DNA of 64,000 nucleotides, from NCBI GenBank assembly GCA_951406725.2, contig OX597819.1:32612001-32676000 (forward strand). Reading direction: 5' to 3'. The notes beneath the pieces were generated by a model. That model did no database searches. It was not told the origin of the DNA and worked only from the letters and a program-made list of their open reading frames with translations. The translations under genes were made by a program, and so were the position numbers. This document shows, in pieces, positions 2,904 to 26,949 of the stretch; position 1 is the first letter of the stretch; the number at the start of each line of letters is the position of its first letter. This DNA comes from Octopus vulgaris. Taxonomy: Eukaryota.

Positions 2904-3729
<826 letters not shown>

Positions 3730-12515: not shown

Positions 12516-12675
12516 CTATGAGTTGTTAGAAGATATGAACAAATCAACATAAAATTGGTGAGCAAACTAACTCTCCAGTCGTGTGTGTTCAGCCAAACAT
12601 AGCGAAAAGAAAAATTACCCAAGCTGCACTAATTTGAATAGAGGTATATTACGTATACACGTGTTCATGTACATG

Positions 12676-12752
<77 letters not shown>

Positions 12753-13211
12753 GTCTCCTTGTCTGTCTATTTATCTGTCTTTCTGTTTGTCTGTCTCTGT
12801 CTGTCTGTCTGTCTCTCTCTGTCTCTCTGTCTCTCTCTCTCTCTGTATATATGTGTGTATGTGTCTGATGTATATATATATATTTGTATGTACATGCCTT
12901 TTTATGAGTATAAATGACAGTGTATGTATTATGAATTTATGTATACGAGTGAATGTTTATATATATATATACACACACATATGTATATATGTATTTACAT
13001 ATATATATATTTGAGTAGTTGAATGAATTATCTTATTAAGGATAATTCGAAAGATAACCGATACCTGGGTAGCAAATTCACATCAGAAAGAACACGGTTG
13101 AAGCTACGTCCCTTGGGCATAGACTACGTGTCTTCGTGCGGAAATTTGTATGTTTATTTTAAAATTATAAGTATATGAAAGAATGGAGTTGAACGACTAG
13201 TTAACAAATAT

Positions 13212-13306
13212 CCTTTATTCTCGACATATGTTTCGAAGGCTGCATATTCCTAATTCCGAAGGAATAAGGAGTATATTATGCAGATTTCTCATCAGGAAAA
13301 TCAAGG
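13212..13306 (-). ncRNA. Type I hammerhead ribozyme (minus-strand copy)
   Basis: Reverse complement of the plus-strand HHR at 13374-13468; predicted cleavage between 13223 and 13222. Confidence 0.75.
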
Positions 13307-13373
13307 AACTTATGTCGACATTAAAATGCACAAAAAACATTTAGCTGACCGCTCTCATAAGTCGACATAAGTT

Positions 13374-13468
13374 CCTTGATTTTCCTGATGAGAAATCTGC
13401 ATAATGTACTCCTTATTCCTTCGGAATTAGGAATATGCAGCCTTCGAAACATATGTCGAGAATAAAGG
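13374..13468 (+). ncRNA. Type I hammerhead ribozyme with long stem II and minimal stem III
   Basis: CTGATGA 13385-13391; stem II G13392..C13445 (GAA/TTC, CTGCATA/TATGCAG); GAAAC-ATAT-GTC with cleavage after C13457; stem I CCTTGATTTTC pairs with GAGAATAAAGG (one G.U, one mismatch). Confidence 0.8.
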
Positions 13469-14446
13469 ATATTTGTTAACTAGTCGTTCAACTCCATTCT
13501 TTCATATATATATAATTTTAATATATATATATATATATATGTGTGTGGAAATCTGTGGGTATGTTTGTTTGTGGCGTTGTTATGTAACTCGTCCTACAAA
13601 GTTTTATCGATTTTAATGAAACTTAACACGTGAGTAGAACTTGTGTCTGGGAAATTAGTGGCATACTTAGATTGTTGAAAAAATTGATAATAGGGCCTCT
13701 GGAAAGGATTTTTTTATCTACTACATATAACTAATATATTGTTTTTAAACATCCAAGAGAAATAACACATTCGCTCCTGAAACGGATCCTTATATATAGC
13801 CAAGAGAAATAAACGATTCATATTCGTAAATTATTTCGTATAAATCAAATTGAGTATGCTTATTTGAGCTATTTTAGTTATTTTCGCAATTTATCCAGTA
13901 CAACGCTTAAACAAGTGAATAATATTTTCCTACACAATATATCCACTTATTTCGCTTAGTGCCTTATTCATGAATACACCAACACTAGCGCCGCTGAGGG
14001 TAATATTCTCTGCGAACGCATAAAAGCTTTTTTTCAGAGATTTTTACTTCGAATTGTTATTATCTCATATCTAATTAGCCTGATATTACGTAACATGCTT
14101 CATGATTTTAGTACACATACATTATTAGTATTTCCTCCTAAGTTTTATATTCTCTGGGAGCGTATTAAAGCCCTTTTCGGTGCTACTTTATTTGAATTCT
14201 TACTATCGGGTAATTAATTTCATGTTATTACATAACTGACTTCACAGTTTGGAAATATTGGAAATTCCTAAAAACAAGATCCCGTGTAAGACAGTGCGGT
14301 ATTCTCTGTAAATGCACAAAAACGTTTTAAAGGCTACATACTTTGTATCGTTGCTACTTGATTAGCAAAACAATTATGAGAACGGAACCAAGGGATATAT
14401 ATATATATATATATATACTCTTACATACATGAGCATATGGAGTATA

Positions 14447-15799: not shown

Positions 15800-16821
15800 T
15801 GTTGGACAAAATAATGGAAACACCTTAAAATTTCAAGCAAGGTTATTTTAATATGGGGCAGGACCATCTTTAGTAGTAATTACAGCTTGGATTCTATGAA
15901 GTATGGATTCGTACAAAGTTCTTGTAGTGGGGATGGTGGAGAATATCGACTCCTTACTTGATTTCTAAAATGCACTATAAGTGTTTAATAATATTGAGAT
16001 CTAGGGACTATGGTGGCCAGATAAGATGTTCAACTTCACTAGAATGTTCCTCGTGCCAGTCAGTAACAACTTTAGCTGTGTGAATTGCTGCATTATCATC
16101 CTGAAAGATTGCGCTTCCCTTCGGAAACAGTTTCGTAAACATAAGATGAATTTGATCAGATAAAATGCTTAAATAGTCTTGACTATTAATTCTGTCATGA
16201 AGGGAAACCAAACGAGCCTGCGGATTTCCGAGATATAGACTCCCAGATCATCACAGAACCTCCTCCATGTTTAACAGTTGAAAGAAGGCAGTCTTGGTCA
16301 AATGCTTCTTTTGGCAGTCTCCAGATGTATATTCGAACGGTGGGAGGAAATAAGGTAAATGATGACTCGTCCGAGAAAACGACATTCTTCCACTGCTCTA
16401 GGGACCAATTCTGTAGGTTTTTACTCCACTTTAAACGCGTTGCAACGTTTGTTTTTGAAACTAGTGGTTTTCTGATTGCAGCCCTCCCGTGAAATCCGGT
16501 TTGGTGCAGCTCCCGGAGAATAGTTTTTGTGGAAACTGAGTTCTCGAGGTGGTCATTAAGCCCTGCAGTAATTTTGGGAGCTGCACTTTTCTGATCCTTT
16601 CTAAGAACTCGCGTAAGTGTCCGACTGTCTCTATCTGAAACTTGATTTTCTTCCGGAGTTTTTTTTCGACGAGGAGGTTTTCCCTCTTTTTCAAAGGCTG
16701 TCATTACTTTCGAGGCATTACTTTTTGATACACCAAACATTTCGGCTGTTTTTGTTACGATAGCGCCTACAATAGGAGCAAAAACAATTTGACCTCTTTA
16801 AAAGTCCGATAGATCTGTCAT
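15796..16821 (-). pseudogene. Tc1-family transposon, decayed transposase, one TIR
   Basis: Motifs VVFSDES, TVKHGGGSVMIW, IFQDDNAAIH and WPP*SLDLNII; start MTDLSDF*RGQIV at 16821; TA|CAGATGTTGGACAAAATAATGGAAACACC terminus at 15796; the opposite TIR was not found. Confidence 0.92.
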
Positions 16822-24148: not shown

Positions 24149-24639
24149 TGTATGCATATATATAAATACATATACATAAATATATATATATATAAAATGA
24201 AGAAGCAAATGGTATAGTTACCCACATTATCCTGCACAACTAATCAGCGCTCTAATAGATCTTGAGGAATATAAAATTAAGAAAGAGAGAAACAAATTTC
24301 AAAGGTCAGTATTCATATTCATTCAGTCCATTTCAAATTGTCCGAATTCTCCACAATATACATAGATACATTCATATATATATGATATGGTAAAAATACA
24401 TAAGAATTTATAGATATATAAATATACGAGGATTTATTAATATATAAAAATTCATAAACATGTAAAAAAATTATAAATATATAAAAATTTATAAACATAT
24501 AAATCTAAATACATAGATTTACTTGCGTGGTTGAATGTCCGTATTAGAATTAATGAGAAGGCTAGATGAGAAAGTTAGTATAAAATGATTTAAGAGGAAT
24601 CTTCAATAAGTGCTTGGTCTGACGTGTGTGTGTGTATAT

Positions 24640-24698
<59 letters not shown>

Positions 24699-24754
24699 AA
24701 AAAATGAAGTTCGAAAATGCTGCTGTATTATACAATTTTTAATTTTTATATATA

Positions 24755-24800
24755 CATTATAACATGTTTCAGTTCCTGAAATGAACCTTATCAAAAAAAG
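24755..24800 (-). ncRNA. Minimal hammerhead-like motif, U3-A8 variant, at the PLE 3' end
   Basis: Minus strand UUGAUAA-GGUUC-AUUUCAG-GAACU-GAAACAUGUU; G10.1.U11.1 wobble; poor stem I. Confidence 0.4.
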
Positions 24801-25169
24801 TTATATATAAAAAAAGACAGCTCATGCCGTCAAACACAAGAAATTCATTTATAATACACAACGGAGTCAGACATCTTAGAGTTCATGTATAGTTGATATA
24901 TAGTTCATGTATAGTTGATATATAGTTTGAAGTATATGTTCAAAGTGTTCGATGCAGTGGCCCACGGTGGCGATACGTATTCAATACAAAAAACAGATCA
25001 AAGTGGTGGAAAGCGGTCAATACAGAAGATTGATGTTTCCGAAAGAGCGAGGAATTCATTTTTACTTTAAGCAATTGTGATGACCCATGGTGGAAGTTCG
25101 CTGGGTGGTTCTAGTGAGTTTTTGTGAAATGCTCGGTTTTATAATGCCTGTTAGGTGGTCAATCTAGCG

Positions 25170-25605
25170 TAGCGTGACGTCATCAATGTTTTGACCAATC
25201 GTTTCGTTAGGTGGCTTTAATCAAGTAGAACAGGACGTCATCATTATTTTGACCAATCGCTGCATTATAACTCCCTCTTGTTTGTTTCCTGTTTTGACCA
25301 GTCGCTTCGTTAGTCAAGTAGAACGGGACGTCATCATTATTTTGACCAATCGCTGCATTATATCTGCCTCTTGTTTGTTTCCTGTTTTGACCAGTCGCTT
25401 CGTTAGTCAAGCAGAGCGGGACGTCATCCAGATTCTGCCCAATCACGACTTATAGCTACATTAGATCTGCCCCCTGTCTGTACTTGTTAGGTGACTATTC
25501 AAGCAGAAAAGGACGTCATCAATATTCTGATTAATGACTGTCCCCTGTTTGTATCCTGTCCATTCTAGCAGAGCTAGACGTCATCAACTTGTTGACCAAT
25601 CAGAA
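25170..25605 (+). promoter_or_regulatory. Array of six GACGTCA-N12-CCAAT composite motifs in ~93-bp tandem repeats
   Basis: GACGTCA at 25176, 25234, 25327, 25420, 25512 and 25577, each followed after exactly 12 nt by CCAAT (TTAAT in the fifth). Regulatory function is inferred. Confidence 0.5.
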
Positions 25606-25754
25606 TCGGGTCTGACCCTTAGCTGTATCGTATGTATCAGGGTCAGATTTTTTCCTTTTTTACTAAGGCATATTTCCGTCAGAGTGAGTGTCTGTTTGAA
25701 GTAGCGGCCGTGGTGGAATTTTGCTTCTCCTTTTCGGAGGACTTATCTTTTGTT

Positions 25755-26921
25755 TTAGTATTCCTGGCCCAGGGTGTTTAAACTTGGTCTAAATTTTTTT
25801 ATGAAATATAGTTCTTTATTTTGGCGTTGTGTGAAGGTTGCGTTGTCACTGAATTTATAGACAGGGTTAGTTGTAAATTTCGGATTTACATTTCCAGCAC
25901 ATCTATCTATGTGTCCGCTGACCGGTATTTTGCGGTAATCAGGGTTTCTAATTTGTGATTTATGCACCGCCATCCTGTTACGTAAGCTATTTTTTGTATG
26001 GCCTATATACTGCCTATTGCAGCCTGCGCATGTTATGACGTAAATTAAGTTTTCTGATGCGCAGGTGAAGTTTGTTCTAATGGTGAACTGGTGGCCTTGT
26101 TCCAGTATAAATTCTGATCCTTCTTTCAAGATGACACAGATTCCGCAGTTGGGCCTTCCACATTTTCTAAATGCTGGTTTTGTGGTTGATGTTGAGTGCA
26201 GTGTAGCTTGGGTTAAAATCCTTTTCAAGGATTTTGGTTGCCGTTTACTTTTAATGATGGTGTGTGTTTCGAGGATCCGGTTCATCTTTGGGTCTCCCTT
26301 TAGTAGGGCTGTGCTTTGTAGTATGGTGTTGAAGGCCTCATTGTTGAGTGGGTTGTGTGTAGAGATGTAGGGAAGGGTTTTTAATTGTTCTTTCTTTTTT
26401 GGTTTTGTTTGTCTCAGGTCTTCTCTACTTAATTTAAGTACCCGTTGGATTGTACTGTCTATTAGGGGCTGTGGATAGTTTCTATTTGTGAGTGTGGTTC
26501 TAAGTTCCTGGAGACGTGTGTGTCGGGTGTTTGTGTCTGATATTATGGTGCAAATCCTTCTAGCTAAACAAAAAGGGACATTCATTCTAGTGTGTCGTGG
26601 GTGGCATGAATCAAAGGGTAGGTACTGTTTAGAGTCTGTCGGTTTATAGTAGATATCTGTCTCTATTTTGTTGCCGGTTTTCTTAATAAGGATGTCTAAA
26701 AATGGTAATTCTTTTTCGTTGTGGTCCATCGTGAATTGTATATTGTCATTTATTCCATTTAATAGAATTTTAAATTCCTCAAGTTTCTCTATGCCTTTGT
26801 CCCAGATGATGAAACAGTCATCGAGGTATCTTTTCCAGTTGTTATGGATATAGGTGGCGAAGGTGTTTCCATATTTCTCGAGTGTCATCCGGTATAGTAT
26901 TTTCTCGAGGTATCCCATCAC
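25755..26921 (-). CDS. Penelope-like element polyprotein, C-terminal RT plus GIY-YIG endonuclease (5'-truncated)
   Basis: 388 codons without a stop; LVMGYLE, WKRYLDDCF, LPFLDI, YYKPTDS.QYL, PRHTRMNVPF; CGRPNCGIC zinc motif; NLIYVITCAGCNRQYIGHT...LRNRMAVH GIY-YIG. Confidence 0.95.
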   Translation of the reverse strand: MMGYLEKILYRMTLEKYGNTFATYIHNNWKRYLDDCFIIWDKGIEKLEEFKILLNGINDNIQFTMDHNEKELPFLDILIKKTGNKIETDIYYKPTDSKQYLPFDSCHPRHTRMNVPFCLARRICTIISDTNTRHTRLQELRTTLTNRNYPQPLIDSTIQRVLKLSREDLRQTKPKKKEQLKTLPYISTHNPLNNEAFNTILQSTALLKGDPKMNRILETHTIIKSKRQPKSLKRILTQATLHSTSTTKPAFRKCGRPNCGICVILKEGSEFILEQGHQFTIRTNFTCASENLIYVITCAGCNRQYIGHTKNSLRNRMAVHKSQIRNPDYRKIPVSGHIDRCAGNVNPKFTTNPVYKFSDNATFTQRQNKELYFIKKFRPSLNTLGQEY

Positions 26922-26949
26922 TAGGTATTTATATATATATATATATAAA

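What the first reader, a model, noticed from the sequence alone, without database searches (positions are those of the whole stretch)
13159..13521. Near-perfect 161-bp foldback placing a complete hammerhead on each strand
The arms differ at only 3 positions and face head-to-head across 41 nt. Each arm has all core nucleotides (CUGAUGA, GAAA, GUC), a 10-pair stem I with one mismatch, a 54-nt stem II and a palindromic stem III loop (AUAU) of the minimal, dimer-cleaving type. A transcript in either direction carries an HHR in its 3' half and its antisense in the 5' half, so it could form long dsRNA that sequesters the ribozyme or feeds small-RNA pathways.
Basis: partly seen in the sequence, partly recalled or inferred. 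Interest (0 to 1): 0.75.

Follow-up and report, generated by a model that had tools for sequence, protein, structure and literature searches.

The report
Head-to-head Penelope retroelement insertion, hammerhead on each arm
The foldback is real, but it is an ordinary double insertion of a very abundant octopus Penelope-like retrotransposon. Two truncated copies of its ribozyme-bearing 3' end were laid down 5'-end to 5'-end in a (TA)n microsatellite, a layout already described for these elements.

Summary
Arms 13159-13319 and 13361-13521 differ at 3 of 161 positions, and each carries a complete type-I hammerhead motif with an 8-nt palindromic helix III. The predicted cuts are after 13457 on the plus strand and between 13223 and 13222 on the minus strand.

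The foldback is not a dedicated module. The arms are two 5'-truncated copies of the 3' untranslated region of a high-copy retroelement (at least 1386 first-look candidates in this 2.8-Gb genome, probably an Octopus).

Longer copies run upstream into an ORF end with a GIY-YIG-type endonuclease. Its relatives carry the reverse-transcriptase and linker motifs of the 'Hydra' clade of Penelope-like elements (PLEs). The published traits of that clade are canonical hammerheads and (TA)n targeting.

Fourteen of 30 sampled loci show the same head-to-head layout, each with a different junction. In every pair one copy ends at the long 3' end and the other at an internal AU-rich site. An unrelated hammerhead family shows the same layout.

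This matches the published PLE insertion pattern and the in vitro result that a PLE protein cleaves and extends both DNA strands.

The scan has noted similar head-to-head PLE insertions elsewhere in this genome. I file this as a new member of a known kind, of low to moderate interest.

The parts
13011..13357 (-). Long-form copy of the PLE 3' region, 5'-truncated at family position F331 (= E1). It contains the hammerhead and the ~150-nt 3' extension ('tail', 13011-13158) that the right copy lacks.
   Evidence: It is collinear at 95-98% identity with copies at 29 other loci. The same sequence continues 5' into an ORF end in L019, L025, L014 and L005.
13211..13307 (-). Hammerhead motif of the left copy. 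The predicted cut is between 13223 and 13222.
13358..13360 (.). 3-nt filler at the 5'-to-5' junction of the two copies.
   Evidence: Junction listing. Family homology of the left copy ends at 13357 and that of the right copy starts at 13361.
13361..13521 (+). Short-form copy covering F369 to about F539. It is 5'-truncated 38 nt further than the left copy, and its 3' end lies at the internal AU-rich site about 65 nt past the predicted cut.
13373..13469 (+). Hammerhead motif of the right copy: CUGAUGA at 13385-13391, GAAA at 13446-13449, palindromic helix III at 13449-13456. The predicted cut is after C 13457.
12953..13010 (.). (TA)n/(CA)n microsatellite at the 3' end of the left copy.
   Evidence: All sampled copies end in (TA)n.
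13522..13547 (.). (TA)n(TG)n microsatellite at the 3' end of the right copy.

Best explanation

Two cDNAs of the element's 3' untranslated region were primed from the two ends of the cut target and grew towards each other. They were joined 5'-end to 5'-end with 3 nt of filler. One cDNA started at the terminal site and gave the long form (minus strand, 13357->13011). The other started at an internal AU-rich site about 65 nt 3' of the ribozyme cut site and gave the short form (plus strand, 13361->13521).

The region copied contains the family's hammerhead. This is a type-I motif with a 2-bp helix III and a palindromic loop, which is expected to cleave only as a dimer or with protein help. The inverted layout therefore puts a hammerhead on each strand.

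What is shown: family membership, the recurrent layout with independent junctions, the (TA)n ends, the long/short asymmetry, and the ORF link to PLEs. What is inferred: priming on both strands, single-event origin, ribozyme activity, and any RNA made from this locus.
For: (1) Copy number. The 161-nt arm has at least 1386 first-look candidates in the genome, and the top 50 are 95-100% identical.

(2) Element structure. Copies are collinear over up to about 1.17 kb (L005:687-1860) and run 5' into an open 321-aa ORF end (L025:1-963). The ORF end has a GIY-YIG-like domain (Pfam E=7e-4, 20.2 bits).
- Its last 115 aa have 16329 first-look candidates in the genome, inside open frames of up to 713-883 aa.
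- phmmer finds 1962 relatives.
- The long relatives (P0099, P0082, P0062) carry RWK, ADKT, an F.DI..FYPSI motif A, a YRDDG motif C, a CxC..C-PLxGxC linker, and CxxC and CxH in the endonuclease. These are the features Craig et al. 2021 list for Hydra-clade PLEs, together with canonical hammerheads and (TA)n insertion (PMC8557442).
- A profile of these proteins aligns over 402 columns with a bona fide PLE ORF of this genome that has RVT_1 plus GIY-YIG (hhalign probability 97.3%, E=2.7e-11).

(3) Recurrent layout. Fourteen of 30 sampled loci have a head-to-head pair.
- Truncation points differ between loci.
- The junction gap is 0-6 nt in 11 of the 13 pairs whose junctions were listed, some with palindromic microhomology such as CCATGG. 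The 14th pair (L019) was inferred from the translation.
- There is no microsatellite at the junction.

(4) Asymmetry. Every pair has exactly one copy ending at F678. The partner ends at F522-541 in 13 pairs and at about F479 in one.

(5) Independent family. An unrelated-sequence hammerhead family has a 233-nt-arm foldback with a 10-nt spacer, (TA)n on both sides and an ~88-nt extension on one side only.

(6) Literature.
- PLE insertions often carry an adjacent inverted 5'-truncated copy and a tail at one end only (PMC8557442).
- A purified PLE protein cleaves and extends both DNA strands and initiates reverse transcription internally, downstream of the hammerhead (PMC11167929).
- Metazoan type-I hammerheads with a 1-2-bp helix III and a palindromic loop work as dimers (PMC4209133).

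(7) Ribozyme conservation.
- A subfamily only ~77% identical keeps the core (CUGAAGA), has a U-A to A-U compensatory change in stem II, and has GUA in place of GUC.
- Several sequence-distinct motif classes in the sampled loci keep the architecture with different helices and palindromes: ACGAUCGU, ACUCGAGU, ACAAUUGU.
- The predicted dimer has an intermolecular 8-bp helix III and is 7.4 kcal/mol more stable than two monomers.
Against: - The RT link therefore rests on homologues from other sources and on open-frame lengths.
- The Pfam GIY-YIG score of the octopus ORF piece is below the curated cut-off, and Pfam finds no RVT_1 in the long homologues.
- In L025 the CxC..C linker is replaced by N/S-rich low-complexity sequence, so that copy may not encode a working enzyme.
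- Partner copies are no more alike than random copies of the family (1.8% against 1.2% divergence). Sequence similarity therefore gives no support for co-insertion.
- No Rfam hammerhead model matches.
- There are no RNA or read data.
- The 30 loci are the best matches to the arm, not a random sample.
Confidence: 0.87

Rival explanations
1. Two independent insertions: a second copy of the same family landed next to an older one by chance or by target preference.
For: The family is very abundant and targets (TA)n. Insertion into the (TA)n tail of an older copy does occur, as in the head-to-tail arrangement in L022. Partner copies are not more similar than non-partners.
Against: A (TA)n-targeted second insertion should land at a microsatellite, that is at the 3' tail. 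Here the copies meet at their 5' ends with 0-6 nt between them and no microsatellite, in 11 of the 13 pairs whose junctions were listed. All 14 pairs combine one long copy with one shortened copy. Taking the proportion of long forms among solo copies as about 0.78, chance would give about 3e-6 for 12 pairs (my own arithmetic on the counts).
Confidence: 0.05
2. A DNA-level foldback element or MITE whose terminal inverted repeats happen to contain a hammerhead and which moves as a unit.
For: The arms are long, near-perfect inverted repeats with a short spacer.
Against: The junction position, spacer and arm length differ at every locus, so the foldback is not copied as a unit. The outer ends are unequal (long against short). 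No target-site duplication is seen, only (TA)n. The arms are collinear with the 3' region of an ORF-bearing retroelement.
Confidence: 0.02
3. An assembly or long-read artefact, that is a palindromic chimera.
For: Palindromes are a known failure mode, and Craig et al. note that PLE structures trouble assemblies. No reads could be checked.
Against: The arms differ at 3 positions and end differently. They lie inside unique flanks in a 135-Mb contig. Fourteen loci and a second family show the same layout with their own junctions.
Confidence: 0.02
4. A host-selected hairpin-RNA locus (miRNA- or siRNA-like precursor) derived from the element.
For: The hairpin is very stable. There are sub-threshold matches to long plant miRNA-hairpin models (MIR821, 152 bits against a gathering score of 249).
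Against: The Rfam matches are below threshold and symmetric on both strands, so they reflect the hairpin alone. The arms are as diverged as any two copies of the family. Nothing distinguishes this locus from the 13 other pairs. No expression data are available.
Confidence: 0.03

Closest known systems
[quoted passage not shown] 2021, PMC8557442)
   Same: (TA)n insertion; a canonical hammerhead in the non-coding repeat region; an inverted 5'-truncated copy next to the 5' end; an extension ('tail') at one end only. Relatives of the ORF end carry RWK, DKT, a CxC..C linker, and CxxC and CxH, and lack CCHH.
   Different: The one-sided extension is about 140-155 nt here, against the 30-40 nt described. 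The 3' junctions fall on AU-rich stretches matching the (TA)n target. In the octopus copy read here the zinc-finger-like linker is replaced by low-complexity sequence. Copy number looks very high (16329 first-look candidates), whereas the paper reports only a few Hydra families outside Cnidaria.
Poseidon PLE of Anolis carolinensis, PAc (Frangieh et al. 2024, PMC11167929)
   Same: The protein cleaves and extends both target strands. Reverse transcription starts internally, downstream of the hammerhead cut site. There are two alternative start sites, which explain the 'tail'. The target is AT-rich.
   Different: In PAc the two start sites are 30-40 nt apart, show no homology to the target, and show no strand difference in vitro. 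Here they are ~150 nt apart and AU-rich, and in every pair the two sides used different sites.
Metazoan type-I hammerheads and PLE minimal hammerheads that act as dimers (Cervera & de la Pena 2014, PMC4209133; Forster et al. 1988 as cited there)
   Same: Full catalytic core, G10.1-C11.1, a 6-bp proximal helix I, and a 2-bp helix III with a 4-nt palindromic loop that allows an extended intermolecular helix III.
   Different: Stem II is a 54-nt imperfect hairpin rather than about 4-6 bp. No Rfam model detects it.
Animal non-LTR retrozymes (Cervera & de la Pena 2020, PMC7229834; Li et al. 2026 preprint, 10.64898/2026.07.22.740005)
   Same: Non-coding hammerhead-bearing repeats linked to PLEs.
   Different: Retrozymes are direct tandem repeats that can release unit-length circular RNA. 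This locus is an inverted pair, which cannot, and the family has an ORF-bearing parent.
L1 twin-priming inversions (Ostertag & Kazazian 2001, from my own knowledge)
   Same: Both ends of the target break prime reverse transcription, giving an inverted 5' segment.
   Different: In L1 the two segments are adjacent, non-overlapping parts of one RNA. Here the two copies overlap over 161 nt, so either two templates were used or one template was copied twice.

Membership tests
Hammerhead ribozyme, type I | Conserved core C3 U4 G5 A6 N7 G8 A9 / G12 A13 A14 / A15.1-U16.1 / H17 | tested here: met
   CUGAUGA, GAAA and ACAUAUGU-C are present on both arms. The core is kept in a subfamily ~77% identical.
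Hammerhead ribozyme, type I | Helices I, II and III around the core, open at helix I | tested here: met
   The minimum-free-energy fold gives helices I and II. Helix III is 2 bp in the monomer and 8 bp in the predicted dimer. Different helix sequences with the same architecture occur in other families. The motif scan gives 50 observed hits against 0 in 20 randomisations.
Hammerhead ribozyme, type I | Match to a curated Rfam hammerhead covariance model | tested here: not met
   No hammerhead family matches at the gathering score or at E<=10. The likely cause is the 54-nt stem II and the minimal helix III; that cause is my inference.
Hammerhead ribozyme, type I | Site-specific self-cleavage | not testable with these tools
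Related PLE hammerheads cleave weakly in vitro or need protein.
Penelope-like element (Hydra clade) | [quoted passage not shown] | tested here: inconclusive
   Only the last 321 aa were readable in this genome. They have a GIY-YIG-like domain below the Pfam cut-off. Open frames reach 713-883 aa. Homologues show RT motifs, and their profile aligns with a PLE RT-endonuclease ORF at 97.3% probability. No full-length octopus copy was read.
Penelope-like element (Hydra clade) | RWK, DKT, CxCX5C linker, CxxC/CxH in the endonuclease, no CCHH | tested here: inconclusive
   All are present in homologues P0099, P0082 and P0062. In the octopus piece CxxC and CxH are present, but the linker cysteines are absent and the N-terminal motifs lie outside the piece.
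Penelope-like element (Hydra clade) | Insertion into (TA)n | tested here: met
   Every sampled 3' end is followed by (TA)n. Many 5' flanks are also microsatellite.
Penelope-like element (Hydra clade) | Hammerhead in the non-coding repeat region; complex inverted insertions with an adjacent inverted 5'-truncated copy | tested here: met
   The hammerhead lies ~550-650 nt 3' of the stop codon. Head-to-head pairs occur in 14 of 30 loci.
Penelope-like element (Hydra clade) | Partial tandem (pseudo-LTR) organisation | not tested
   No full-length unit was available. A pseudo-LTR was seen only in the other, 781-aa PLE family.
Non-LTR retrozyme | Direct tandem repeats, each with a hammerhead, that release unit-length RNA | tested here: not met
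   The two copies are inverted, not tandem.
Foldback / MITE DNA transposon | Fixed terminal inverted repeats and target-site duplication, copied as a unit | tested here: not met
   Junctions and arm lengths differ at each locus, the outer ends are unequal, and there is no target-site duplication.

The most novel reading that the evidence does not exclude
The head-to-head pairs record integration of an RNA dimer. The palindromic helix III of the hammerhead (ACAUAUGU) pairs two template RNAs in a dimeric PLE ribonucleoprotein. Each strand of the (TA)n break then copies one of them, from two different start sites (terminal and internal). The resulting thousands of foldbacks become hairpin-RNA sources that feed silencing of the family.
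Probability: 0.08. Interest if true: 0.6.

Novelty: new member of a known kind. Interest (0 to 1): 0.25.

Why it matters
For the question asked, the finding is explained. A hammerhead on each strand here is a side effect of how Penelope-like elements integrate, not a new ribozyme device.

It has modest value for transposon biology. The family is young (about 1-2% divergence) and very abundant, which gives many independent genomic records of PLE integration. These records have nucleotide-level junctions and a strict one-long, one-short rule. The in vitro system (PMC11167929) did not show that rule.

The hairpins are candidate dsRNA sources in a cephalopod genome, but nothing here shows that they are used.

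Tried and rejected
- Rfam at gathering score over the whole window, and at E<=10 on the locus and on a full copy, gave no hammerhead family. It gave only sub-threshold hairpin matches (MIR821 and others), which I reject as artefacts of the long hairpin.
- My first reading was a ~714-nt non-autonomous SINE-like element. I rejected it when longer copies ran into an ORF.
- I looked for the parent among 32 GIY-YIG loci of the genome. These belong to other PLE families, including an intact 781-aa one, and none shares the tail or the hammerhead. The parent was found instead by walking 5' along long copies.
- I searched the genome with a tail-only copy.
- I tested whether partner copies are more alike than non-partners. 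They are not, and the family is too homogeneous for the test to decide.
- Pfam on the long homologues and a PDB sequence search with their profile found nothing. The RT identity therefore rests on motifs and on the hhalign match.
- The search for homologous proteins found only two unnamed Octopus sinensis proteins.
- A fragment in L003 that seemed to start at the ribozyme cut site starts about 8-9 nt past it, so it is not evidence of cleavage.
- The tail of the 479-nt retrozyme array aligns only weakly with this family's tail, so I claim no homology.

Full report
**1. The observation**

The inverted repeat is real. The repeat finder gives arms 13144-13319 and 13361-13536, 176 nt long, 95% complementary and 41 nt apart. 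Outside the core only AT-rich low-complexity sequence matches.

As RNA the region forms one hairpin of -280.6 kcal/mol. Shuffled sequences give -73.7 +/- 5.3 (z = -39).

Each arm, read 5'->3', holds a complete type-I hammerhead motif:
- helix I 5' strand;
- CUGAUGA;
- a 54-nt imperfect stem II;
- GAAA;
- a 2-bp helix III with loop AUAU, so that ACAUAUGU is an 8-nt palindrome;
- C17;
- helix I 3' strand.

The monomer fold recovers helices I and II. A two-molecule fold forms the intermolecular 8-bp helix III and is 7.4 kcal/mol better than two monomers.

No Rfam hammerhead model matches at any threshold I tried. The only Rfam matches are sub-threshold miRNA-hairpin models, which respond to the hairpin itself. 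A strict motif scan of my own found 50 instances in 347 kb of window plus fetched loci, and none in 20 randomisations.

**2. What the arms are**

The window comes from a 2.8-Gb assembly of 227 contigs. The only close protein relatives found are from Octopus sinensis. Earlier notes of this scan also take the genome for an octopus.

The 161-nt arm has at least 1386 first-look candidates in the genome, and the best 50 are 95-100% identical. Comparing 30 fetched loci showed several things.
- The left arm is part of a longer collinear copy (minus strand, 13357 down to about 13011) that ends in a (TA)n microsatellite.
- The right arm is a shorter copy (13361-13521) that stops at an internal AU-rich stretch and is also followed by (TA)n.
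- The 41-nt 'spacer' is 38 further nucleotides of the left copy plus 3 nt of filler.
- Other copies extend further 5', first by 330 nt and then to about 1.17 kb.
- The longest ones run into the end of an ORF.

**3. The parent element**

L025:1-963 is an open 321-aa C-terminal piece. It ends in a GIY-YIG-like domain (Pfam E = 7e-4, 20.2 bits, just under the cut-off of 22.6).

Its last 115 aa have 16329 first-look candidates in the genome. The best 150 are 79-100% identical and lie in open frames of up to 713, 741, 833 and 883 aa.

A full phmmer scan of 1.8 billion representatives gave 1962 relatives. The long ones (P0099, P0082, P0062) carry the following motifs:
- an N-terminal RWK;
- ADKT;
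- reverse-transcriptase motifs (F.DI..FYPSI, GLYRDDGL, FLD);
- a CxC..C-PLxGxC linker;
- an endonuclease with CxxC and CxH.

Pfam does not recognise their RT, and neither does a PDB sequence search. However, their profile aligns over 402 columns, from RT to endonuclease, with a 781-aa PLE ORF of this genome that does score for RVT_1 and GIY-YIG (hhalign probability 97.3%, E = 2.7e-11).

Craig et al. 2021 define the 'Hydra' clade of C-terminal-endonuclease PLEs by exactly these traits: RWK, DKT, a CxCX5C linker, CxxC/CxH, no CCHH, canonical hammerheads readily detected, and almost all families inserted in (TA)n (PMC8557442). I therefore place the family in or next to that clade.

**4. The foldback as an insertion scar**

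Of the 30 sampled loci, 14 carry a head-to-head pair of copies of this family.
- The truncation points differ at every locus, so the foldback is not copied as a unit.
- In 11 of the 13 pairs whose junctions were listed the copies meet within 0-6 nt, sometimes on a palindromic microhomology such as CCATGG. No microsatellite lies between them.
- A second, independent (TA)n-targeted insertion would land at the 3' tail, not at the 5' end.

In all 14 pairs exactly one copy ends at the terminal site (F678). The partner ends at the internal site (F522-541) in 13 pairs and at about F479 in one. Taking the proportion of long forms among solo copies as about 0.78, chance would give about 3e-6 for 12 such pairs (my arithmetic on the counts).

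An unrelated-sequence hammerhead family shows the same picture:
- 233-nt arms, 97% complementary, with a 10-nt spacer;
- (TA)n on both sides;
- an ~88-nt extension on one side only.

**5. Agreement with the literature**

Frangieh et al. 2024 showed three relevant things about a purified PLE protein (PMC11167929):
- Reverse transcription starts at two internal sites downstream of the hammerhead.
- The hammerhead is protein-assisted and is not needed for insertion in vitro.

Cervera and de la Pena 2014 describe metazoan type-I hammerheads with a 1-2-bp helix III and a palindromic loop as dimer-dependent (PMC4209133).

The most likely mechanism follows from these results. The endonuclease opens a (TA)n tract. 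Both 3' ends prime on AU-rich stretches of the template, one at the 3' terminus and one at the internal site about 65 nt past the cut site. The two cDNAs are then joined at their 3' ends, which correspond to the RNA 5' ends. The priming on both strands and the joining are inferred, not shown.

**6. Is the ribozyme maintained?**

A subfamily only ~77% identical overall keeps the region around the hammerhead much better than its flanks. It has CUGAAGA (N7 is free to vary), a U-A to A-U double change in stem II, and GUA in place of GUC, which is still a permitted cleavage triplet.

Several sequence-distinct motif classes in the sampled loci share the architecture, with other helix sequences and other 8-nt palindromes of the form AC-NNNN-GU. 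This is covariation between families.

Activity itself is untested. Related PLE hammerheads cleave poorly on their own.

**7.

A transcript through the whole locus would indeed fold into a long perfect hairpin and hide the ribozyme.

Nothing sets this locus apart from the other pairs. Its arms are as diverged as any two copies of the family.

**8. Other points**

- Twelve of about 44 sampled copies begin within a 15-nt window (F306-320), just 3' of a TGACGTCA plus TATAAAG pair. This suggests a discrete RNA 5' end, perhaps an internal promoter as reported for PLE pseudo-LTRs. That reading is an inference.
- The 3' tail of the family is shared with another high-copy family (at least 1516 candidates).

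**9. Verdict**

The locus is an ordinary head-to-head insertion of a Hydra-like Penelope element and a new member of a known kind.

The scan has already noted similar head-to-head PLE insertions on other pieces of this genome (s1-118415, s1-118360) and in this window (s1-118400).

Noticed in passing
L001-L030 (pairs in L001, L003, L006, L010, L012, L013, L018-L021, L024, L027-L029): In all 14 head-to-head pairs exactly one copy ends at the terminal 3' site (F678). The partner ends at the internal AU-rich site (F522-541) in 13 pairs and at about F479 in one. The one-sided extension is ~140-155 nt, much longer than the 30-40-nt PLE 'tail' in the literature.
   Followed up: partly
L025:1-963 (+), compared with P0099, P0082 and P0062 in alignment A3: In the octopus ORF piece the CxC..C-PLxGxC zinc-finger-like linker is replaced by ~130 aa of N/S-rich low-complexity sequence, yet the family still ends in (TA)n. 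If this copy reflects the active protein, that argues against the proposal that the linker directs (TA)n targeting.
   Followed up: no
L004:1420-1452, and the same position in other copies: A TGACGTCA (CRE-like) box and a TATAAAG box sit about 60 nt 5' of the hammerhead. Twelve of ~44 copies start within the 15 nt just downstream (F306-320). This may be an internal promoter or RNA 5' end.
   Followed up: partly
window 24635-26926 (-): A 5'-truncated copy of a different PLE family, 98% identical to L043. L043 has an intact 781-aa ORF (RVT_1 plus GIY-YIG), 456-nt direct pseudo-LTRs and a (TA)n 3' end, but no canonical hammerhead in the part read.
   Followed up: partly
window 3618-3722 (-): A tail-only (~95 nt) copy of a related family lies between two TA microsatellites. 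That tail variant has at least 1516 first-look candidates in the genome at 98% identity.
   Followed up: partly
L046:3429-3904: A second, unrelated-sequence hammerhead family (helix III ACGAUCGU, cleavage triplet GUA) forms a 233-nt-arm foldback with a 10-nt spacer. It is flanked by (TA)n and lies next to a copy of the 781-aa PLE family.
   Followed up: partly
window 16195-16740 (-): An ORF with a Tc1/mariner-type transposase HTH domain (PF01498, E = 8e-14).
   Followed up: no
L027:1975-2032 and L003:1407-1463: Two pairs join further 5' than the rest. In L027 the junction is a perfect palindrome built from ~24 nt of element sequence on each side.
   Followed up: no
window 12641-12870: Long compound microsatellites, (ATCT)n then (GTCT)n/(CT)n, lie immediately left of the insertion site, so the neighbourhood is microsatellite-rich.
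   Followed up: no
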